Below, in pieces: positions 9,151-54,384 of a DNA stretch of 64,000 nt. The stretch comes from Mizuhopecten yessoensis (Eukaryota). Within the stretch, counting starts at the first letter, position 1; each line of letters starts with the position of its first letter. A program made the translations under genes and the position numbers. The stretch spans positions 1,378,819-1,442,818 of the forward strand of contig NW_018408783.1 of NCBI RefSeq assembly GCF_002113885.1, given 5' to 3'. The notes below the pieces were generated by a model. It worked only from the letters and a program-made list of their open reading frames with translations, did no database searches and was not told the origin of the DNA.

Positions 9151-11951
9151 TAGTCTCCTCGTTTGGCATGAAGTAAGATACAGCAGGTCTTTTCGTTACC
9201 TTATCGAGGAAGCGTCTCTGTTACCTTGGTTATTAACGATTAACGGAGGAATAATTATTGTATTATATTATATAATGCATACCATATATATTTACGGCAA
9301 CAGCAGCAAGAGCAGTTGAACGTTCTAAAATGACATTTCCATCTAACAGAGCTTTTGTTAAAAATGTATTCTATTGTCGTTTATATATTTAATTTGTGTT
9401 GTCACTTATAAAGTCCAAATAACATTACATTCATTAACAACTACATATTTGTTTTTAATATACAGCAACAGTTTAGGTTAGTCGGCAACATTGTATTATC
9501 TCCTTTAGCTAAATAGTAAGAAAAGCATTCATATTAATTGCAGAACAATATCATCAAACGAATAGATAAGGAAAACCTATAGAAAACCATCATTTATATA
9601 ATAGTCAGTAACGTGCTAGTAAAGCATTCTCTCTCCTAAACGGATGAGGCAAGGTATGTACATGTACCTTTACGATGTTACAGTCAGAAAATTGACAAAA
9701 ACTAATTTTTATGCGATGTTTATTTACTTTAGATGATTTCAGTTTGCGCTTGTATTTTAAGAGTTGCCTATTTTCTCGCAGACGTTAAAATGACACATAA
9801 CGACGTTATGTTTACTATCTTAGCCATTACGGAACTCAATATTTTGAAATCAAACCATTTGCTTATTTAGTCCCTAGTCGGGCATTAAAAAACCAAAAAG
9901 GCAGTTCCTATACGGAGATCACCAGATGCATCTACAGTACGTATATGAGATTAACATAAACTAACTCTCTTACTCTATTGAATCTATCATATGTAAAGCG
10001 GAATGTTGGAGAGGCTTCAAGCAAAAGACCGTTTTAGATGTAAACAACTGATATTTTGATTTTGCATTACTGGGTTAAAGCTAGTTCCAAGAAAAAGGCA
10101 GACGTAATTTTACAAGATGTATTTTGCTCAAACACACAACCACAAATCGTTGTCGACGGGATCCAGTATCCTTCTCAGGTAAATAGAATATTCAGTGAAA
10201 TACTGACATATAAAACTACAAAGTGATTCCCCGATATATACTCTGTATTTATTGAAACGTTATCATCCCCATCTGCTGTCAACTCGTCCTCATACAGTCC
10301 ATAGTGGTGAGTCTATAGGTGAGTAATAAACGGCTTTTTATTTTATTATATTTTATGTTCGGTAGATTTTAAGACAGCATGAATTATTAAATAATCTTTA
10401 CGATCTAACGAAATATCATTTAAAACTAATAACGTAAGGTAGTTAATTTTCTCTCATTCCCCTGTGTGTAAAATAGAGCTGTCCAGGGTAAGAAAAGGAA
10501 AACGTGCCGTGCCGTTATAATGGATCAACAATGACGAGACGTCACCACTTTGTAAAGGCGACGTGATGAAATTAAAACATTTTACAATATATTTAACGCA
10601 CAAATTACAACGATGAGTTTGACTTTTCAGTGCAAACACAGCAAATATGGGGTATGCTTAATCTGGCTGACTGATTCGTTTTCGTTCATGGGAAAATTGA
10701 TATTTTCAAAATGGTAGCCAGTCCAAACGCATTTTCAGTTTTTGGGCTTTTTCTGGTAGTTGGAATGAGAGAAAAAAAAGCGCGTGCCCAACGTTGTAAG
10801 ATCGTTAAATTCCACCCTCGGGATTTTTCAAATTTGGAAAGCCTCGGGTTTGAAAACCCCTTCAGTGGGAGTGAAAGAGTCTTATAACATTACTTACCGT
10901 AGTGAGGGATAATCATCCCGTGAAATATGAACAATTTCTGTGTAGTAACGTGTTCTTAAAAAACCTTAAGATCGTTCCAGCGTAAAATGTTCATGTAAAG
11001 ATAAACTGTTTTATTAAATTGTTGATATTTTGTTATATATGGATTGAAAGGTTGTTTTCAATTTTCATGCCGGTATGAACACAAATCTGTTACATACATA
11101 TTGCTTGAAGCGTGCTAGTAACCGATTTGCGTTCATACTGGCATGATAATTAAAACAATGCCGTTCAATGCATATCTAAACACTTTTTTTCTATAGAAAA
11201 TATTGTTTACTTTTGTTTATTTATTCTTAAATTATTTACTGTATTTTGTTTATGCGTCGTGCTTTAAACGACAATGGCGCAACAGCCCGATTAAACTGAA
11301 ATTGGGGCCAATAATTAACCGTAGTCATTTTAGTGTTTGACGCAGGGGCATTCTCCATGTTACTAGAAGCGAAAGGACAAGACTCTCACTGAACAAGGTT
11401 AATCTATAGCTTCATAAGTAAACCACGTGTCACGTCACGATAGTTTTTGCTTTCAAACTCAAATGATATGCATTTCTAGTGGTAATGTTCATATAGAAGG
11501 TTTCAGCGCAAATGTAAATATAAATATATAATGTCCAGATTGAGTTGTGCACATTTTCTCCCATGCTTCGCATTCCCGAAATACATGTCTTACTGGACTC
11601 TTAAGACGACTTCCCTCCACACTTTTGAAAACTTCCCATTGCGTTAACTTTGTATGTAGTAGAACTAGCGCATCGTCATGCGCTCTTGGTGATGAACCGC
11701 AGCGTTGGGTTCACCATTGCAACACTAATCAATCACTTCTTTTTAAATCAGACAGATACATCTCAACTCTTGGGCTAAGATTAACACATGGTTAAACATC
11801 ACGTTTTGCTTGAAACATTCTTACCCGTGTTTCTGATTACTTTTTCTACATCATAAACGTTCGATATTTTCTATTACATTGTACATGCAATGTGAAACCG
11901 GCTTGGGCTAATGAAATATTGTTTCCTTAAACAGTGTCACACAACGGGGAA

Positions 11952-21587: not shown

Positions 21588-24500
21588 TTTTGTAAAAAAT
21601 GTATTGAACAAACATGCGACTCACATGGCATTCTCCCAAAGTTATTTATAGCAATATTCCAGTTGCGAGTTAAATGCTATAATAGTGGAGAGCTCCATAA
21701 GTAAATCAACTTTAGTCAATCGTAGTTTATATGTAACAATTAAAATGGTCCAATTAAGATTTGTTTCCCCTTTTATGGGGTCATTTCAAACAAGAAATCT
21801 CTTTACAAGGTGGAATAAAACAATTATAGATATGAAAGCATGACATTTTACAGAGTTTGTTTAATCAATATGGTCATAGGTCATGACTCCTGGTGTTTAT
21901 GAAACATAAACTGACACAAATAAAGTACAGGGTTATAAGTCGAAGCCATACTTATCGCCAACAGTTTAACGATAGATATTATATCAGTTTGTAGTAGGTT
22001 CACCCTGAGTGGAACATACACGAATACGATCAATGCAAACAGCCCATACATATCTAAAGGGTTGATAATGTATATCAGGAGAAATCAAGAAACACTTACT
22101 ATCGGAAAGCATTGGTTTTGCTAAGAGGTGTTATAAATATTTTCACTTGGAGACAACGCTGAGGATGATATAGTATATGAGTGCTACTCCAAAAAGACCT
22201 TATAACTAAACAGCCACCATTCAGAGCCGAGCTGCGCCAAAAGGAGGTAGCTTTCTCAATTATCATTATATGTCTGTCTGGTATGTGTATGGGGTTTAAA
22301 AATAACGTCCTTGCAACAGCTAAGGTCATTTGAAGACATGTGCCAAGAGAGACAGGAGAGAGTAGGTAAGATAGAAAACAACATATGTTGATCCCCAGGA
22401 TTTTTATTGGCGCAACAGGTCGATTTCGGTGTTGTCAAGGTACTGTTAGTAACCGGTAGAGAAGAAACACCTTGTTGTCAGTTCCTGTTAGTAACCGGTA
22501 CAGAAGAAACACCTTGTTGTCAGTTCGTGTTTGTGTGTGTGACACAATAGTCTCGTCGTACGACATGAAGTGAGATACAGCAGGTGTTTTCGTTACCTTA
22601 TCGAGGAAGCGTCTCTGTTACCTTGGTTATTAACGATTAACGGATGAATAGCTATTTTATTATATATATCATAAAATGCATATCATTTTACTCATACTTT
22701 ATTTCGCAATAGCATATTTATTTACGTTACAAAGAAATCGGCAACAGCAGCAACATCAGTTGAACTTTCTAAAATGAAATTTCCATCTAATAGAACTTTT
22801 GTAGAAAAATGTATTCTATTGTCGTTTATATATTTAATTTTATTGTTACTAATAAAGTCCAAATATCATGTCATTAATTAAACATTTCAAACTGCACATT
22901 TGTTTTTAATATAAAGAAGCATTTTAGGTTAGTCGGCAACATTTGACTATTTCAATAATTTCAATTATATATATATTTAAAGTCCGCGTGCTAGTTATAT
23001 TTGAAATGCATACTATTTATGTTTGTTTATATATGTTTTATGAGAATAAGTGACAACAAGACCTAGTCGTATATCACACCATTAACACAATAACATATTG
23101 TAAACCAAAGACTACATTAGCAAAAAGTAAAAATGTTGTTCACTCCTTTTGCTAAATAGTGAGAAAATCATTCATAGTAATTGCAAAACAATATCAGAAA
23201 ACGAATAGATATGAGAAACCTGTAGAAAACCATCATTAATATAATAGTCAGTAACGATATACAAATGAGAGCTATCCTCTGTTTAGTAGAATCATTCAAT
23301 TCTTTTTCACTCTTTTTTCCTATCAGTAGGATAACACTGGCATTCCTTATTTTGTTACATAGCACAAGTGATTACCTACGTTATTACCACACGCAGGGTG
23401 TCAATGATATTTTCGTACGTGCCGTAAAGAATTGGATGATATATCTAATTTCTCGCTACCCCAATGGGTCCCTTTACATTAACAATCTTCCTGTTCAAAT
23501 TTTGACACGCTTCTCCTGTTTAACAGTAGTTAACACTACTTCATAGGTGAAGTGACGTTATAGATCTTGTTCAATTAAAAATGAAGTGACGTTATAGATC
23601 TTTTTCAATTAAAAATGAAAACACGTTAATTGTGTAAATGTTACCTCTGACCCGTCGAAAATATTGTTGCAGTAATTGTATGTTGTGTTGACTTCTGCTC
23701 TCATGACATCTTGTGAAATCGCTTATGCATGATGATAAAGTAAACATGGATTAAACTCTGCACCTTTTGAGATAAGAACCAGTCGTGAAAAAAGGCTTTG
23801 CACGATTATACTGGACACAAATATTAGTCAATGGAGTTTTATATCTTTTAATACCAATATGCATTTCATATTTATTTATTAACTTCAATTTTAGCAGTAT
23901 TTTTTTTCGGCAGTTAACGGAACGGTAACTTAAACAACATGTACTAGTCAAAAAATTTGAATTATTGCTAAAAGTTGTCAGTTACATATGTTAACTCTCT
24001 CACGAAAATACGGGGGAATAGGGAATGTATCCTTAGCTGAATTATACTGTCCAGCCAACCTGAAATGGGGTATATTCTTCGTTTTTAAATTGATAATAGG
24101 TATATGTTACATGCACCAGCGAGGGTAATAATTTGATCTTTCGTACGAAAGCACACTGCTAGTTATGCATTTCCTCTCCTAAACGGGTGTAGGCAGGGTA
24201 TGTTCCTTTACGATGTCACGGTCAGAAAATGGACAAAAACTAATGCTCATGCGATGTTTATTTCATTTAGATAATTTTAATTTGCGGTTGTATTTTAAGA
24301 GTTGCTTATTTTCTCGCAGGCGCTAACATTTAATGACGTTATATTTAACGTATAAGCCATTACGGAATCCAATATTTTGAAATTAAAGCATTTGCTTATT
24401 TAGTCCCTAGTCGGACATTAGAAAACAAAAATGCAGTTCCAAAACGGAGGTCACCAGATGCATCTACAGTATGTATGTGAGATTAACATAAACTTACTCT

Positions 24501-26953
24501 ATTACTCTGTTAAATCTATCATATATAAAGCGGAATGGTTAAGAGCCTTCAGACCGAAGACCGTTTTAGATGTAAACAGCTGACATTTCGATTTTGCGTT
24601 ACTGGGTTAAAGCTAGTTCCAAAAAAAGGCAGACGTAATTTTACAAGATGTTTCAAGTATTTTGCTGAAACACACAACCACAAATCGTTGTCGATGCGAT
24701 CCAGTATCCGTCTCAGGTAAATAGAATATTCAGTAAAATACTGACATATAAAACTAAAAAGTGATTCCCTGATATATACTCTGATAAGACTGTGTATTTA
24801 TTGTGACGAGATCATCACCATCTGCTGTCATCTCGTCCTCATACAGTCCATAGTGGTGAGTCTATAGGTGAGTAATAAACTGCTTTTTATTTTATTATAT
24901 TTTATATTCAGTAGATTTTAAGACAGCATGCATTTTTAAAAAGTTTTCACGATCTGACGAAACATCATTTAAAACTAATAACGTAAGGTAGATAATTTTC
25001 TCTCATTTCCCTGTGTGTAAAATAGAGCTGTCCAGGGTAAGAAAAAGGAAAACGTGACGTGATGTTATAATGGCTCAACAATAACGAGACGTCACGACGT
25101 GATGAAATTAAAACATTTTACAATATATTTACCGTACAAATTAGAACGATAAGATTAACTTTTCAGTACAAACAGAGGAAATATAGGGTATGCTTAATCT
25201 GGCTGACTGATTCGTTTTCGTTCAGGGGAAAATTGATATTTTCAAAATGGTAGTCAGTCCAAACGCATTTTCAGTTTTTTTGGCTTTTTAGTGTAGTTGG
25301 AATGAGAGAAAAAAAAAAAATCTCATGCCCAACGGTGTAAAATCGGTAAATTCCACCCTCGGGATTTTTCAAATTTGGCAAAACCCTCGGCAAAGCCTCG
25401 GGTTTGACCAGATTTGAAAACACCATCTGTGGAAGTTCCCTGTCATACACCCGTGGGAGTGTAGTAACGTGTGCTTAAAAAAACTGAAGATCGTTTCGGC
25501 GTAAAATGCTCATGTAAAGATAAAATGTTTTATTAAATTGTTGATATTTTGTTATATATGGATTGAACGTTTTTGTTTTCAATTTTCATGCCGGTATGAA
25601 CACAAATCAGTTACAAACATATTGCGTGAAGCCTGCTAGGGTTTCATGTTTGATATGGATATAACCGATTTGCGTTCATACCGGTATGAAAATTAAAACA
25701 ATGCCGTTCAATGTATATATTTAAAAAAAAATCTATAGAAAATATTGTTCCCTTTTATTTATTTATTCTTAAATCATTTATTTATTTACTGCGTTTCGTT
25801 TATGCGTCGTGCTTTAAACGACATTGGCGCAACAGCCCTATTAAACTAAATTGGGGCCAATAATTAACCGTAGTCATTTAAGTGTTTGACACAGGGGCAT
25901 TCTCCATGTTACCAGAAGCGAAGCGACAAGACTCTCACTGAATAAGATTAATCTATAGCGTCATAAGTAAACCACGTGTCACGTAACGAGAGTTTGTGCT
26001 TTCAAACTCAAATGAAATGCATTTCTACTGGTAATGTTCATATAGAGGGTTGCAGCGCAAATGCATATACAAATATATAATGTCCAGATTGAGGTGTGCA
26101 CATTTTCTCCCATGCTTCGCATTCCCGATAAACATGTCTTACTGGACTCTTAAGACGACTTAGGAACAAAGCTTCCCGTGTCTGTTACTACAACGCTTGA
26201 TAGAATACTGATATGTGCCCAATTCAAACATCGAGTCGGTCAGTTTTAGTTCAGTTTGGTTTTGTTTGTTTAATTGAATTTAGAGTCATATTAACAGCTA
26301 GGGTCAATTAAGTGAAGCGCTTCCATGTGTGAAATGTATGCGGTGTAATGGGGGTATGTTGCTGGTGTATTTATCTCCTTGTAATAGTGTGGATTGAAGG
26401 TTAATCTATAGCGTCATAAGTAAACCACGTGTCACGTCACGAGAGTTTTTGCTTTCAAACTCAAATGAAATGCATTTCTACTGGAAATGTTCATATAAAG
26501 GGTTGCAGCGCAAATGCAAATACAGATATATAATGTCCAGATTGAGGTGTGCACATTTGCTCCCATGCTTCGCATTCCCGATATACATGTCTTACTGGAC
26601 TCTTAGGACGACTTCCCTCCACACTTTTGAAAACTTTCCATTGCGTTAACTTTGTATGTAGCAGAACTAGCGCATCGTCATGCGCTCTTGGTGATGAACC
26701 GAAGCGTTGGGTTCACCATTGCAACACTTCTCAATCACTTCTTTTTAAAGCAGACAGATGAATCTCAACTCTTGGGCTAAGATAAACACATGGTAAAACA
26801 TCACGTTTTGCTTGAAACATTCTTACCCGTGTTTCTGATTACTTTTTCTACATCATAAACGCTCGATATATTCTATAACATTGTACATGCAATGTGAAAC
26901 CGGCTTGTGCTAATGAGATATGGTTTCCTTAAACAGTGTCACACAACGGGGAA

Positions 26954-48198: not shown

Positions 48199-48908
48199 AT
48201 GAATATTAGTCATTGGAGTGTTATATCTTTTAATAGCAATATGCATTTCATATTTATTTATTAACTTTAACTTTAGCAGCGGTTTTTCGGCAGGTTGCGG
48301 AGCGGTAAATTTAACTACAGGTACTACATGTAGTCGAGACATTTGAATTATTGCTCAAAGTTGTCAGTTACATATGTTAATTCTCTCACGAAAATACCGG
48401 TGGAATAGGGAAGGTGTCATTAGCCAAATTATAATGTCCAACCAACCTAAAATGGAGTATATTCTTCGTTTTTAGATTGATAATAGATATACGTTACATG
48501 CACCAGCGAGGGTAATATTTTGATATTTCTTACGAAAGCACACTGCTAGTTATGCATTCCCTCTCCTAAACGGATTGAGGCAGTGTATGTTCCTTTACGA
48601 TGTCACGGTCAGAAAATGGACAAAAAACAGTTCTTATGCGATATTTGCTTCCGTTAGATGATTTCAATTTGTGGTTGTATTTTTAGAGTTGCATATTTTC
48701 TCGCAGGCGCTAACATTTAATGGCGTTATGTTTACATTCTTAGCCTTAACGGAACTCAATATTTTGCAATCAAAGCATTTGCTTAAACAAAAAAGTAGTT
48801 CCTAAACGGAGGTCACCAGATGCATATACAGTACGCATGTGAGATTAATATGAACTTACTCTCTTACTCTGTTGAACCTATCCAAAGTGGAATGTTGGAG
48901 AGCCTTTA

Positions 48909-49365
48909 GGGACCGCGGAACCAAATGATTTTCCATAGACGATAGTGTTAACGCTTACCACTGTCCTGGTTAAATGGGGTTATCCACACTGGTTTACCTG
49001 ACCTCATTTTGAAGAATAGCATCTCACACAACTGTAAAAAAAATATTTCAAAATTCTGCCAATTTGAACTTTTTTTATATGGGGGCTGCCATCTTGTATT
49101 GAATTCGGCACTAAAAATCGAACAAAATTTACAGCAAATTACACACTTAATAAACTCACCCAGACAAAACCAGACTTGAATTTTTTTTTTAATTTTTTTA
49201 TACATATTAAATCTATATATATTGCTCAACCCACACATAAAACTTTTGAAACTTCTGCCACCTTAATATCCAACCAGCAGGCCCCGAGGCATTCACCTTT
49301 CTATTAAATCTTCTGCCCAAAAGGGAAAAACCCACAATCTATTTTTGATTTGGTTCCGTGGTCCC
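48909..49365. repeat. Left long terminal direct repeat (457 bp) with its own 16-bp TIRs
   Basis: Near-identical to 52555-53010; differs by a handful of substitutions and a poly-T length change. Confidence 0.95.
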
Positions 49366-49841
49366 TATAGGATCCCACATATTTTTCAAATTTACCATTT
49401 TTGGAAACAGTCAGGACCATAGGGTATGAAACCAAAATGGGAAGTGGCTGGCTCCAAGGCTTGGGCTGCTAGGTCAAGTCTTCTACCGGTACTGAAGATG
49501 GAGATTCCTGCAAAAAAAGGCAGGAAAATTGAACCAGTTTCAAAATGTAAACTTGAATATCTTAATAAATATTATACTTAGACTTATGGTTTTGAGTTTT
49601 TATTAAAGTACAGGTACTGTTCTACCCAGAAATATAAACAACAAACATTTTGTCTGAAGATCAGGGGAGATAACTCAATTTTGAGACCCATACCCCCTTA
49701 ATTTTGGACTTTTTGTAAAAAATTGAAGACACCAGCAATTATTTAGAGAAAAGAGTCAAAAACAGACACAAAAGTAAAGACTAATAACTGTACAAACAGT
49801 ACAACACCACAATGATAGGATTACATAATGTTTACATAACA

Positions 49842-50419
49842 NNNNNNNNNNNNNNNNNNNNNNNNNNNNNNNNNNNNNNNNNNNNNNNNNNNNNNNNNNN
49901 NNNNNNNNNNNNNNNNNNNNNNNNNNNNNNNNNNNNNNNNNNNNNNNNNNNNNNNNNNNNNNNNNNNNNNNNNNNNNNNNNNNNNNNNNNNNNNNNNNNN
50001 NNNNNNNNNNNNNNNNNNNNNNNNNNNNNNNNNNNNNNNNNNNNNNNNNNNNNNNNNNNNNNNNNNNNNNNNNNNNNNNNNNNNNNNNNNNNNNNNNNNN
50101 NNNNNNNNNNNNNNNNNNNNNNNNNNNNNNNNNNNNNNNNNNNNNNNNNNNNNNNNNNNNNNNNNNNNNNNNNNNNNNNNNNNNNNNNNNNNNNNNNNNN
50201 NNNNNNNNNNNNNNNNNNNNNNNNNNNNNNNNNNNNNNNNNNNNNNNNNNNNNNNNNNNNNNNNNNNNNNNNNNNNNNNNNNNNNNNNNNNNNNNNNNNN
50301 NNNNNNNNNNNNNNNNNNNNNNNNNNNNNNNNNNNNNNNNNNNNNNNNNNNNNNNNNNNNNNNNNNNNNNNNNNNNNNNNNNNNNNNNNNNNNNNNNNNN
50401 NNNNNNNNNNNNNNNNNNN
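49842..50419. other. Assembly gap (578 N)
   Basis: Run of N; hides the 5' part of the transposase gene. Confidence 1.
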
Positions 50420-51628
50420 GCACCGAGGAAACCCGCCAAACAAAGTAGACCTGATGGTGGATGCCACCTACAACAACCCAATTTATTCTGGTGCGGGGAA
50501 GACTCCGTTCCAGCCAGCGACACAAGTTATGTTCAGCACTATAGAACACAACACCAAGGACCAGTATGTGGTGGACCTTGTCACCAAAAACAAACTATGC
50601 AATATATGGCCACCCTGTGAAAGTGAACATACCTCACACTGTAAAGGTAACTTACCTCTGGCCTCATCAATTGGTAATGAACAGGCGTACTGCTACGAAA
50701 GTCTGGAGAACCCCAAAAGAGACGGCCTGGAGGTGGACAAGCTTGTTACCGACTCAGATACAGGTGCATTCAAGGCTGCTGAAAAGAGATACAAAAGTGG
50801 TGCATCATGTACAAAGCCAACACATAACCTGGACCCTATTCATCTAACAAGGAATTTCAGAAAAACATTTCAAAGTGTGTGAAACTTGAGGAAATAATGC
50901 CGGGATCCACTAAGAAAGAGCGACAAACAATTAAAAAAAGATTTACTTGTGACCTAGCCGCTCGGTGTCAGGCAGAGCTGTATCACCTGTACGACAGACA
51001 TTGTGGGAGTCTCATTCCCTTACAACGTGCTGCTCATGGTGTAAAGGGGGCCATCGTGAAGTGTTACCAAGGTGTACACTGTGAGTGCAGGACCAAATCA
51101 CTAGTGTATGCAGGAAAGGAGAGAAATAACTGGCTAACAGACAACATATATTTACCAAGTGATTTCAAGGTCAGCGGTGGAGAGGCAACTGTGTCAAAAA
51201 TTCTGATGGAGAAAGTTGATGCCCGTCTCGGTGACTCCGTGTTGGAAAAGACCTTGTGGAACCTGACGACCCAAAAGGTAGAATCTGTGAACAGACGGCT
51301 GATGCGGTCTCTCCCATCAAGTGTGAACTTTACTCGTAACTTTTCAGGGAGAGCTCATAGGGCGGTGTATTCTGTGAACCATGGACCGGGAACTGCCATT
51401 AAAGAACTGTGCAGTGGGGTTGGGTCTCCAATCACTGCTGGAAGCTCTGTGTCCAAGGACCTAGATAAAGAACAAAAAAGACATTTGTACAATAAAGCAC
51501 GAAGTCAATCATTGCGGTGTAAAATTCAGAAGAGAAATAAGAGACACAAAATATTCAAATTACATGACTGTAAAATTGATGAAGAAATTTATGTGAAAGA
51601 CAGAGTTATGATTGAGAAAAAGAAATAA
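50420..51628 (+). pseudogene. Kolobok-type DDD/E transposase, C-terminal part, frameshifted
   Basis: Candidate catalytic residues in LMVDATYN, LVTDSDT and TQKVESVN; Cys/His clusters. The frame shifts at a TG run (AGTGTGTGAAA, ~50874-50884) between ORFs 50420-50882 and 50879-51628. Confidence 0.75.
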
Positions 51629-51688
51629 AACATTAAAATATTGAGAACTTAAGAAATAGTCTTTGTTATATTTCAATATATATCTTAC

Positions 51689-51720
<32 letters not shown>

Positions 51721-51732
51721 GAAAGAAAGAAA
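51689..51732. repeat. (GAAA)n microsatellite between the two convergent KolobokP genes
   Basis: AAGAAAGAAAGAAAG... run. Confidence 0.9.
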
Positions 51733-52083
51733 AATAAATAAATAGCTTCTCAATAAATTTGTTTATATAGATTCATTTCAAGACAAAAGCCGGCTGGCTG
51801 CCGGCTTATGGTAGGACGGATTCAGATCCGCTTTATACTGATACCAATGAAATACCCTTTCCATGGGTACTTCCATGGGTACCTTACATGACACTGACAC
51901 CCCACCATTTCATATTATAGACATCAAGTGGGCAAGTTCTTTAAAATCACTTTAAGAGAGTGATACAGCCCATTTTTGTTCAACCGTTTGGTTTGACTAT
52001 AATATAGGTGTCACATCCACAGTGGATGACCTTGACCATGACCTTGACCTAAATACAAAATTCATGTATTACTTACCTGCTGA

Positions 52084-52500
52084 TCACAGCAGACATCTTG
52101 GAACATGGCAACCGGAACACCTGTTTTGTTATTTGCAGTGATTCCTGGCCTGATTGGCTTCATGGGTTTCGATGACTATGTGCTGTATACTGAGGCACAG
52201 TTTGTTGTGGCAGAGATGAATGACCTCCAAAATCTTGCCGTCACAGTCCCTCCTCGGGAAATCCTCCTTCAGCCATCTATAATATACCATCAGTGACAGT
52301 CGGTGCACTCTCTCTGTCATTCTGTGTCCATTTGGCCATCTAACCACAATGCGCCCATATCCTCCCTGGTCTTTGGCCCCCCTCCACACTCTTCAAGGGT
52401 GTATATTGCCATCAAAGTATCCTCTTGCAGCTAATTTTCCCTCTAAATTCTGCCAAAACACATCCCTGGTTAGATTCACAAGCAGAAATATGATGGTGAA
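52084..52500 (-). pseudogene. His-Me finger (HNH, I-PpoI-like zinc-binding) endonuclease with premature stops
   Basis: One frame reads ...DVFWQNLEGKLAARGYFDGNIHP*RVWRGAKDQGGYG...RVHRL...EVIHLCHNKLCLSIQHIVIETHEANQARNHCK*QNRCSGCHVPRCLL*. This fits the W.G...GYG...HR...HLCHN..C...H...E....N..R..C pattern. Internal stops at ~52393-52395 and 52129-52131. Confidence 0.85.
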
Positions 52501-52554
52501 CCCAGCATCTGGTTTCCAGGGACGCTTGAATGGTGTAAAACGTCATATCCTATA

Positions 52555-53010
52555 GGGACCGCGGAACCAAATGATTTTCCATAGACGATAGTGTTAACGT
52601 TTACCACTGTCCTGGTTAAATGGGGTTATCCACACTGGTTTACCTGACCTCATTTTGAAGAATAGCATCTCACACAACTGTAAAAAAAATATTTCAAAAT
52701 TCTGCCAATTTGAACTTTTTTTATATGGGGGCTGCCATCTTGTATTGAATTCGGCACCAAAAATCGAACAAAATTTACAACAAATTACACACTTAATAAA
52801 CTCACCCAGACAAAACCAGGCTTGATTTTTTTTTTTTTTTTTTTTTACATATTACATCTATATATATTGCTCAACCCACACATAAAACTTTTGAAACTTC
52901 TGCCACCTTAATATCCAACCAGCAGGCCCCGAGGCATTCACCTTTCTATTAAATCTTCTGCCCAAAAGGGAAAAACCCACAATCTATTTTTGAATTGGTT
53001 CCGTGGTCCC
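52555..53010. repeat. Right long terminal direct repeat (456 bp)
   Basis: Direct repeat of 48909-49365; preceded by TATA and followed by TTTA. Confidence 0.95.
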
Positions 53011-54384
53011 TTTAGGCCAAAGACCGATTTAGATGTAAACAGCTGACATTTCGATTTTGCGTTACTGGATTAAAGCGCGTTACAAAAAAAAGGCAGACGT
53101 AATTTAACAGGATGTTTCAAGTAACTAGCTCAAAAACACGACCACAACTCTATCCTTCTCAGTTAGATACTGACTATTGGGTGAAATCTATCTGATTTTA
53201 TTACATAACAAACTAAAGGATGCCGCCCTAATATATACTCTGATAAGACTGTGTATGTAATGAAACGTTATCGTCCCTATCTGCTGTCTACTCGTCCACA
53301 CACAGTCCGTAGTGGTAAGTCTATAGGTGAGTAATAAACTACTTTTTATTTTACTACATTTTAGATTCAGTACATTTTTATACATCATGACTGTTTGAAT
53401 ATTCATAAAGATCTGACAAAATATCATTTAAAACTAATATCGTAAGGTAGATAATTTTCTCTTATTTCCCTGTGTATATGATAGAGCTGTCCATGGTAAG
53501 AAAATGTTATAGGACATTTCTTTCTCTCATTTCCCTGTGTGTAAGATAGAGCTGTCCATGGTAAGAAAGGGGCGTACGAAATTATTATCTTACACCCCAT
53601 TTCACGTGACTTGACGTCATCATGGCTCAACAATGACGTGACGTCACGAATTTGGAACTATCCGATGCCGCAATGTTGACGTGATGAAATTAAAACCTTT
53701 TACTATATATTTACCGTACACGTTATAAAGATGTGATTAATTTATTGTGCAAACATTGTTTGCAAATATGGGATATGCTTATTCTGGCTGGCTGATTCGT
53801 TTTCGTCTAAAAAGCTCAGGGGGAAATTGATATTTTCAAAATGGTAGCCAGTCCAAACACATTTTCATGGTTTCTTGGATTATTCTGGTAGTTGGAATGA
53901 GAGAAAAATAATCTCTCATGACCAAGGGTGTACTAGCGTGTGCTTAAAAATTAAAGATCGTTTTGGCGTAATATGTACCTGTAGAGATAAATTGTTTAAT
54001 TGAATTGTTGATAGTTTGTTATAAATATATAAAGTCGAGATTGAGGTGTGCGCAAGTTTTCTCCCACGCTTCAAATTTCCGATATACCCGACATAGGGAA
54101 TACAACTCCCTCCATCCTTTTTCGAAAACCTCTCCATTGTGTAAACTTTGTATGCAGTGGAACTAGCGCATCGTCATGCGCTTTTGGTGATGAACGGCAA
54201 CAATAATCAATCACTTCTTTTTAAAGCATGGTAAAACATCTTGCCATGCTTGAAACATTCTTACCCGTGTTTCAGATTGCTATTTCTACATCATAAACGC
54301 TCGATATATTCTATTACATGCAATTTGAAACCGGCTTTTGCTAATGAAATATTGTTTCCTTAAACAGTGTCACACAACGAGGAA

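What the first reader, a model, noticed from the sequence alone, without database searches (positions are those of the whole stretch)
48905..53014. Composite DNA transposon: two MITE-like direct repeats enclosing a transposase and an antisense homing-type nuclease
Seen: each ~457-bp terminal repeat has its own TIRs, so the element has four potential ends. The outer ends abut TTTA (the TSD) and the inner ends abut TATA (49366-49369, 52551-52554). Inside are convergent DDE-transposase and His-Me finger nuclease genes. Known: this matches the KolobokP group of the Kolobok superfamily, whose usual target is TTAA and whose nuclease function is unresolved. The TTTA target and CCTATAGG-like inner junctions (the host site reads CCTTTAGG) hint at a longer palindromic target preference (inference).
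Basis: partly seen in the sequence, partly recalled or inferred. Interest (0 to 1): 0.7.

Follow-up and report, generated by a model that had tools for sequence, protein, structure and literature searches.

The report
Decayed KolobokP transposon in scallop
This is a worn-out copy of a KolobokP DNA transposon, a composite-like kind described in 2022 and already reported from this scallop, so it is ordinary; the new details are that its family is not in that paper's lists and that it inserts mainly at TATA.

Summary
Two direct repeats (LTDRs, 48909-49365 and 52555-53010) differ at 10 aligned positions. Each has an 18-nt terminal inverted repeat (17/18). TTTA flanks the outside and TATA the inside. 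They enclose a DDE transposase (+) and a His-Me/His-Cys nuclease (-).

Two diverged paralogous host sites in the same window (24548-24551 and 10016-10019) carry the flanks joined over one tetranucleotide. So this is a single insertion with a true 4-bp duplication, not a mis-join across the N gap.

The genome is Mizuhopecten yessoensis ASM211388v2. The element fits KolobokP (Kojima & Bao 2022):
- Transposase: 28% identity, E 3e-34, to KolobokP-1_MiYe.
- Nuclease: 37% identity, E 4e-11, to KolobokP-1_MiYe's.
- Solo LTDRs, monomers and multimers are present.

The family is not among that paper's two scallop families.

This copy is dead. The transposase has a frameshift and the nuclease has two premature stops. 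In two other copies about 1.0 kb, not 578 bp, separates the gap's flanks.

From 142 host half-sites the target is TATA (51%) or TNNA (92%), and TTAA in only 2%.

The parts
48905..48908 (.). Left target-site duplication, TTTA
   Evidence: Paralogous empty sites carry a single tetranucleotide here.
48909..49365 (+). Left long terminal direct repeat (LTDR), 457 nt. Its own inverted repeats are at 48909-48926 and 49348-49365.
   Evidence: It differs at 1-3 positions from the LTDRs of the young non-autonomous derivative.
49366..49369 (.). Inner junction TATA (LTDR/INT)
   Evidence: It equals the family's modal target.
49370..49841 (+). Left part of the internal region. A possible transposase start is the ATG at 49498 (MEIPAKKGRK...), followed by an AT-rich stretch (inference only).
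   Evidence: It is 99.9% identical, together with the LTDR, to non-autonomous copies and 93.5% identical to C5470.
49842..50419 (.). Assembly gap of 578 N. It hides the N-terminal part of the transposase.
   Evidence: The distance between the homologous flanks is 997 bp in C5470 and about 1022 bp in C2762. The letters were not looked up.
50421..50879 (+). Transposase piece 1, with the first D (50460-50462), the TDSD motif (50751-50759) and DxxH (50832-50843).
   Evidence: Pfam PF20700 at E 2e-11. The motifs align with KolobokP-1_MiYe.
50861..50865 (+). A5 run that is one base shorter than the in-frame A6 of copy C5470. This is the frameshift.
50879..51628 (+). Transposase piece 2 in the other frame. 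It holds the zinc-finger region 51062-51109, whose last Cys is Tyr here, the catalytic E at 51281-51283, and the stop at 51626-51628.
52084..52542 (-). His-Me / His-Cys box nuclease pseudogene. It has TGA at 52393-52395, Ile in place of Ser at 52219-52221 next to the catalytic His at 52216-52218, and TAA at 52129-52131 ahead of the C-terminal Cys/His cluster.
   Evidence: PF05551 at E 1e-10. I-PpoI at E 0.002. Copy comparison.
52551..52554 (.). Inner junction TATA (INT/LTDR)
52555..53010 (+). Right LTDR, 456 nt
53011..53014 (.). Right target-site duplication, TTTA
24548..24551 (.). Paralogous empty site 1 (GAGCC TTCA GACC). The host flanks are contiguous here, at about 80% identity.
10016..10019 (.). 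Paralogous empty site 2 (GAGGC TTCA AGCA)

Best explanation
This is one insertion of a KolobokP-type DNA transposon, built as LTDR-TATA-INT-TATA-LTDR, in the Yesso scallop genome. It is now dead. The DDE transposase encoded in the internal region acts on the GG...CC inverted repeats. It uses the two outermost ends to move the whole unit, or the two ends of a single LTDR to move that repeat alone as a MITE-like element. Insertion duplicates 4 bp, preferably TATA. The inner TATAs are fixed copies of that preferred target and travel with the element. A deleted non-autonomous derivative with a 2084-bp period has spread recently and forms tandem multimers. The antisense I-PpoI-like nuclease is thought, following the 2022 paper, to cut within or at the ends of the repeats and so promote unequal crossover and multimer formation. 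That step is inferred and was not shown here. Shown here: the architecture, the single insertion, the 4-bp duplication, the target logo, homology of both proteins to a published KolobokP family, and the defects of this copy. Inferred: the catalytic roles and the nuclease's function.
For: The single insertion and real TSD come from paralogous empty sites in the same window. The genome was identified by matching the paper's Data S2 coordinates to TIR-bounded elements at the same contig coordinates. The transposase shows 28% identity over 366 aa, E 3e-34, to the KolobokP-1_MiYe transposase, with D, D, DxxH, zinc finger and E aligned. Both hit Pfam PF20700. The nuclease shows 37% identity, E 4e-11, to the KolobokP-1_MiYe nuclease, matches PF05551 and matches I-PpoI chains at E 0.002. 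Of 44 solo LTDRs with two host flanks, 34 have identical 4-mers on both sides. One monomer has TACA on both sides (C5522), multimers occur at C5132 and C1671, and a tandem LTDR-TATA-LTDR occurs at C3347. These behaviours are the ones described in PMC9587614.
Against: The N-terminal third or more of the transposase lies in the gap and was not examined. No tree with non-KolobokP Kolobok outgroups was built. The Pfam name of the matching model is 'Mutator-like'. The 389-aa ORF of copy C5470 gave no Pfam hit at E 0.01, although the nearly identical window piece did. No uninterrupted transposase of this family was seen among the scored copies; the best open frames were 447 and 575 aa. The source of the recent activity is therefore unknown.
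Confidence: 0.9

Rival explanations
1. Assembly artefact. The scaffold joins the left half of a non-autonomous element to the right half of an unrelated autonomous copy across the gap, so no such element exists at this locus.
For: There is a 578-N gap. The left contig (LTDR plus 472 nt of INT) is 99.9% identical to the high-copy non-autonomous family, while the right contig is of the autonomous type. The contig ends within 33 nt of the point where non-autonomous copies jump to the homologue of 51030.
Against: The two outer flanks are contiguous over one tetranucleotide in two paralogous host segments. TTTA is on both sides. Both LTDRs belong to the same sublineage: 10 differences from each other against 27-32 from the C5470 and C2762 LTDRs. 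C5470 shows the same order and strand.
Confidence: 0.04
2. Coincidental nesting. Two independent MITE insertions happen to flank an unrelated transposon, so this is not a unit that moves as a whole.
For: The LTDR is mobile on its own, with many solo copies bearing TSDs. The inner junctions carry the preferred target TATA, as two separate insertions would.
Against: The same LTDR-TATA-INT-TATA-LTDR arrangement recurs at many loci with different outer TSDs. Examples are TTTA here and TACA/TACA at C5522, and left ends with TATA, TGTA or TAAA at C5132, C1671, C3490, C76382 and C2086. The empty paralogous sites lack the whole unit.
Confidence: 0.03
3. The nuclease, not only the transposase, shapes integration and rearrangement. 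It would cut the 10-nt palindrome YCC-TATA-GGR shared by all junction types, leaving 4-nt TATA overhangs. Fragments would then be re-ligated into multimers and into matching genomic sites.
For: All junctions read CC-TATA-GG. An LTDR/LTDR junction is a perfect 16-nt palindrome and an INT/INT junction would be a perfect 12-nt one. Genomic targets are enriched for TATA and for C-rich/G-rich flanks. I-PpoI cuts a semi-palindrome with 4-nt overhangs (PMC9587614).
Against: About half of the TSDs are non-palindromic direct repeats (TACA, TTTA, TGTA, TAAA), including this copy's. Cohesive-end ligation cannot make these. All nuclease copies compared are defective in some way. No cleavage data exist.
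Confidence: 0.12

Closest known systems
KolobokP lineage of Kolobok DNA transposons (Kojima & Bao 2022, Mob DNA 13:24, PMC9587614), including KolobokP-1_MiYe and KolobokP-2_MiYe of the same scallop
   Same: It shares the ~450-nt LTDRs with their own TIRs and GG...CC termini, and the internal DDE transposase with a downstream antisense His-Cys box nuclease. It also shares the 4-bp TSD, the solo LTDRs, monomers and multimers, and the TATA at INT ends (as in KolobokP-1_MeMe).
   Different: The LTDR has no blastn similarity to either listed scallop family. Its termini are absent from the paper's consensus file. Five of its contigs were searched for in Data S2: four are absent and the fifth is listed only for a KolobokP-1_MiYe LTDR elsewhere on it. 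The transposase is only 28% identical to KolobokP-1_MiYe. The paper reports no strong target preference, whereas this family shows a clear TATA/TNNA core with a weak C/G-rich palindromic flank.
I-PpoI and other His-Cys box homing endonucleases of group I introns
   Same: It matches PF05551, has the SHLCHN-type catalytic motif, the downstream Asn and the Cys/His zinc ligands, and gives a direct phmmer hit to I-PpoI chains.
   Different: It is encoded in a DNA transposon, not an intron. Its target is unknown. In this copy the Ser before the catalytic His is Ile, and a stop removes the C-terminal zinc site.
Bacterial composite transposons (for example IS-flanked Tn elements)
   Same: Two individually mobile repeats bracket a central segment, giving four usable ends.
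   Different: Here the transposase sits in the central segment and the flanking repeats are non-coding. The repeats are always direct.

Membership tests
KolobokP | Long terminal direct repeats of about 450 or about 660 bp at both ends | tested here: met
   The repeats are 457 and 456 nt and differ at 10 aligned positions.
KolobokP | Each LTDR has short TIRs, with termini 5'-RR and YY-3' | tested here: met
   The TIR is 18 nt with 17/18 matches, and the termini are GG...CC.
KolobokP | The internal DDD/E transposase is homologous to KolobokP transposases, with a DxxH motif and a zinc finger before the last E | tested here: met
   E 3e-34 and 28% identity over 366 aa to the KolobokP-1_MiYe transposase, with the motifs aligned. 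The N-terminal part lies in the gap and is untested.
KolobokP | A small His-Me (His-Cys box) nuclease lies downstream on the complementary strand | tested here: met
   PF05551 at E 1e-10. E 4e-11 to the KolobokP-1_MiYe nuclease. It is a pseudogene here.
KolobokP | TSDs of 3-5 bp, with solo LTDRs and (LTDR-INT)n multimers in the genome | tested here: met
   The TSD is 4 bp: 34/44 solo copies have identical flanks and the empty sites agree. Multimers with a 2084-bp period occur at C5132 and C1671.
KolobokP | The transposase falls inside the KolobokP clade in a tree with other Kolobok lineages | not tested
   No referenced sequences of other Kolobok lineages were available.
Kolobok superfamily (classical definition) | TTAA-specific 4-bp TSD | tested here: not met
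   TTAA makes up 3 of 142 half-sites and TATA 72 of 142. The KolobokP paper also does not report TTAA specificity for this lineage.
His-Cys box homing endonucleases (I-PpoI group) | Catalytic His and Asn plus two Cys/His zinc sites | tested here: inconclusive
   Sister copies carry these residues in the family consensus state. In the window copy the catalytic His and the Asn are kept, the Ser is replaced by Ile, and the second zinc site is cut off by TAA at 52129-52131.
His-Cys box homing endonucleases (I-PpoI group) | Encoded within a group I intron and homing to an intron-less allele | tested here: not met
   The gene lies in the internal region of a DNA transposon.

The most novel reading that the evidence does not exclude
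The family's preferred target, (C-rich)3-TATA-(G-rich)3, mimics the sequence made when two of its own ends abut: GGTCCC-TATA-GGGACC, a perfect 16-nt palindrome. All four junction types in the element share the core CC-TATA-GG. This would mean that one protein reads both the element junctions and the genomic targets. That protein could be the transposase through the contacts that read its ends, or the I-PpoI-like nuclease cutting at TATA with 4-nt overhangs. If so, the long-unresolved site of the KolobokP nuclease becomes directly testable on a defined 10-16-nt palindrome.
Probability: 0.15. Interest if true: 0.55.

Novelty: new member of a known kind. Interest (0 to 1): 0.25.

Why it matters
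The kind of element is known, and the species is already on the list of its hosts. This finding therefore mainly adds an annotation: a third, unlisted KolobokP family in the Yesso scallop. At least 275 LTDR ends match, and a non-autonomous derivative has amplified recently.

The modest new information is quantitative. This family has a clear TATA/TNNA target, not TTAA, with a weak palindromic C/G-rich flank that resembles its own abutted ends. That gives a concrete candidate site for testing what the transposon's homing-type nuclease cuts. A 2026 review still lists that question as awaiting experiment (PMC13565253).

Tried and rejected
- I searched the paper's supplements for the LTDR and INT termini and found no occurrence. 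I also searched for five of this family's contigs in Data S2. Four are absent. The fifth, NEDP02005522, appears only for a KolobokP-1_MiYe LTDR at a different position.
- blastn of this LTDR and INT against KolobokP-1_MiYe and KolobokP-2_MiYe copies found no similarity. The element is therefore not one of the listed families.
I did not try another route.
- I rejected a 2-bp TA duplication with TA as part of the element. Variant tetranucleotides (TACA, TTTA, TAGA, CATA) recur as direct repeats, not inverted ones, on both sides of the same copy.
- I rejected the idea that the C enrichment comes from unrecognised INT ends or duplicated loci. Flanks were de-duplicated, INT-type and LTDR-type flanks were removed and the list was inspected. 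The enrichment stops at the fourth base outside the TSD.
- I did not run the large protein searches. The family scans and the comparison with a published family settled the proteins.
- One search printed locus L075. Its last 65 nt lie beyond the point where copy C2762 stops matching the window's left flank. I did not use those letters to fill or interpret the gap.
Full report
**1. What is in the sequence**

Reading 48700-53300 and the repeat search give this layout:
- TTTA at 48905-48908.
- Left direct repeat (LTDR) at 48909-49365.
- TATA at 49366-49369.
- Internal region (INT) at 49370-52550, which holds a run of 578 N at 49842-50419.
- TATA at 52551-52554.
- Right direct repeat at 52555-53010.
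- TTTA at 53011-53014.

The two repeats differ at 10 aligned positions. Each begins GGGACCGCGGAACCAAAT and ends with its reverse complement apart from one mismatch.

After the gap a transposase reads on the + strand. The stretch 50421-50879 matches Pfam PF20700 at E 2e-11. The frame then changes and continues through 50879-51628. On the - strand, 52129-52389 matches PF05551, the zinc-binding loop of His-Me homing endonucleases, at E 1e-10.

**2. The gap, tested first**

Four lines of evidence bear on it.

(a) The left host flank (48400-48908) and the right host flank (53011-53520) each match two further places in the same window at 76-82% identity. In both places the two matches abut over a single tetranucleotide. 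The alignment reads GAGCC-TTCA-GACC at 24548-24551 and GAGGC-TTCA-AGCA at 10016-10019. The filled site reads GAGCC-TTTA-[element]-TTTA-GGCC. These are paralogous empty sites. Everything between the two TTTAs is therefore one insertion, and the 4 bp are a true duplication.

(b) Both LTDRs belong to the same sublineage. They differ from each other at 10 positions, but from the LTDRs of the other autonomous-type copies at 27-32 positions.

(c) In copy C5470 the sequences that flank the gap here lie in the same order and on the same strand, 997 bp apart. In C2762 the corresponding distance is about 1022 bp. The N run of 578 is therefore probably about 0.4 kb too short, and the element is about 4.5 kb long, which is typical for autonomous KolobokP.

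(d) The left contig ends within 33 nt of the point where the abundant non-autonomous copies jump to the homologue of 51030. That is a natural place for a short-read assembly to break.

Whether the two sides are in frame cannot be told. I did not look up the missing letters.

**3. Which genome and which family**

The assembly has 987,588,634 bases in 82,659 contigs. Coordinates that Kojima & Bao list for KolobokP-1_MiYe (NEDP02005522:408847-409281 and NEDP02000107:320139-324643) fall exactly on TIR-bounded elements at the same coordinates of contigs C5522 and C107. The genome is therefore Mizuhopecten yessoensis ASM211388v2.

The paper (PMC9587614) defines KolobokP by these features:
- LTDRs of about 450 or about 660 bp, each with its own TIRs and RR/YY termini.
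- An internal DDD/E transposase.
- A downstream antisense His-Cys box nuclease.
- TSDs of 3-5 bp.
- Solo LTDRs and multimers in the genome.

All of these are met here.

The protein comparisons used a sister copy and the published family:
- The uninterrupted 389-aa frame of C5470 aligns with the KolobokP-1_MiYe transposase at 28% identity over 366 residues, E 3e-34. The two D, the DxxH, the zinc-finger cysteines and the E are in register.
- The published transposase hits the same Pfam model over its full length, at E 4.5e-91. The name 'Mutator-like' of that model is therefore not evidence against Kolobok.
- The nuclease aligns with that of KolobokP-1_MiYe at 37% identity, E 4e-11, and with I-PpoI chains at E 0.002.

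The family itself is not one of the two listed for this scallop:
- There is no blastn similarity to their LTDRs or INT.
- Its termini are absent from the consensus file.
- Of five of its contigs searched for in Data S2, four are absent. The fifth is listed only for a KolobokP-1_MiYe LTDR elsewhere on the contig.

I could not check Repbase. I did not test whether it is the same family.

**4. The family in the genome**

The first 30 nt of the LTDR occur 275 times with up to 3 mismatches, and 0 times in the reversed control. Among 109 fetched loci the following forms occur:
- Solo LTDRs.
- A monomer with TACA on both sides (C5522).
- Multimers (C5132 with at least three units, and C1671).
- A tandem LTDR-TATA-LTDR (C3347).

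A non-autonomous derivative with a 2084-bp period keeps three parts: the LTDR with the first 472 nt of INT (99.9% identical to the window), the 3' half of the transposase gene (81%), and the last 340 nt of INT (88-90%). Its copies at seven loci differ from the window's left LTDR at 1-8 positions, most at 1-3. They carry different TSDs, so they transposed recently.

No uninterrupted transposase of this family was seen among the scored copies. The longest open frames are 447 and 575 aa. By contrast, six KolobokP-1_MiYe copies have clean 675-aa frames.

**5. State of this copy**

Comparison with four to seven other copies shows these defects.

In the transposase:
- The A run at 50861-50865 is one base shorter than the in-frame state of C5470, which gives the frameshift.
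- The last Cys of the zinc finger is Tyr (51107-51109).

In the nuclease:
- TGA at 52393-52395, where four other copies have TGT.
- Ile instead of Ser (52219-52221) next to the catalytic His (52216-52218).
- TAA at 52129-52131, where all seven other copies have TTA. This cuts off the C-terminal CxxCHxxxC cluster.

Every compared copy has defects of its own. C5470 has a 7-bp deletion near the transposase C-terminus, Cys to Phe in the nuclease motif, and a right LTDR truncated after 31 nt. C2762 has a 16-bp deletion. No clean ATG-to-stop nuclease frame was found in any copy.

**6. Target site**

I used 142 non-redundant host half-sites: 84 left and 58 right. INT-type and LTDR-type flanks were removed.
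- The four duplicated positions read T 94%, A 77%, T 79%, A 98%.
- TATA makes up 51% of sites, TNNA 92% and TTAA 2%.
- 34 of 44 solo LTDRs have the same 4-mer on both sides. These include non-palindromic ones, which shows that all four bases belong to the target and not to the element.

The inner TATAs are therefore simply the modal target, and this copy's TTTA is a minority variant (about 16% of sites counting TTTA and TAAA together).

Outside the duplication, C is enriched at the first three positions. It reaches 32-35%, against 13-20% at 1,022 control TATA sites and 11,524 control TNNA sites of the same window. The odds ratios are 2.0-3.2 and p ranges from 5.5e-3 to 2e-6. There is no enrichment at the fourth position. 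A CC half-site occurs in 11% of cases against 3% in controls.

The preferred site, CCC-TATA-GGG, equals the sequence formed by two abutted ends of the element.

**7. How it most likely works**

Shown here: one insertion, a 4-bp duplication, four ends of which either the outer pair or the pair of a single LTDR have been used, and a target logo.

Inferred from established knowledge of DDE transposons and from the paper:
- The transposase cuts at the GG...CC ends and integrates with a 4-bp stagger.
- The LTDR behaves as a MITE.
- Multimers arise by unequal crossover or through circular LTDR-INT intermediates.
- The nuclease may promote this by cutting the repeats.

A 2026 review still calls the last step unconfirmed.

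My own speculation is that the nuclease site is the CC-TATA-GG junction palindrome. It is limited by the fact that half of the TSDs cannot arise by cohesive-end ligation.

**8. Verdict**

The element is an ordinary, decayed member of a kind already described from this species. What is new is minor: an unlisted family, its target logo, and the empty-site proof.

Noticed in passing
window 9614-10496, 24015-25045 and 48400-53520: The host sequence around the insertion is present three times in the window at 76-82% identity. This is a local segmental or tandem duplication with units about 14-24 kb apart. Only the third unit carries the transposon.
   Followed up: partly
window 53445-53585: A unit of about 65 nt is repeated twice in tandem (53456-53520 and 53521-53585, 82% identical). 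It also has more than 200 dispersed matches in the genome at 81-89% identity. It is probably a short interspersed or satellite-like repeat.
   Followed up: no
window 49527-49841; L075 (G000:C2762:2194414-2195034): Copy C2762 matches the window's INT only up to 49526 and then diverges. The AT-rich 315 nt at 49527-49841 are shared by the window, C5470 and the non-autonomous family. This stretch may be an intron or an insertion in the 5' part of the transposase gene. I did not pursue it, because that would mean reading letters equivalent to the gap.
   Followed up: no
window 51690-51740: An (AAAG)n microsatellite lies between the convergent transposase and nuclease genes. Its length varies between copies and it is deleted in C2762.
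   Followed up: partly
L103 (G000:C5470:127032-129160), residues of 2-1168:+: The 389-aa transposase frame of C5470 gave no Pfam hit at E 0.01, although the nearly identical 153-aa window piece hits PF20700 at E 2e-11. This is probably an effect of HMMER's filters.
   Followed up: no
G000:C4073:5502-5792 (-): A transposase fragment of this family (80% identity) lies inside a reported open frame of 1810 aa without stops. This could be an N run read as X, or a fusion with a host gene.
   Followed up: no
G000:C5138:1195702-1196787 and G000:C2015:1939141-1940226: Further KolobokP-like transposase genes at about 30% identity have open frames of 643 and 448 aa without stops. They may be KolobokP-2_MiYe or additional families.
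   Followed up: no
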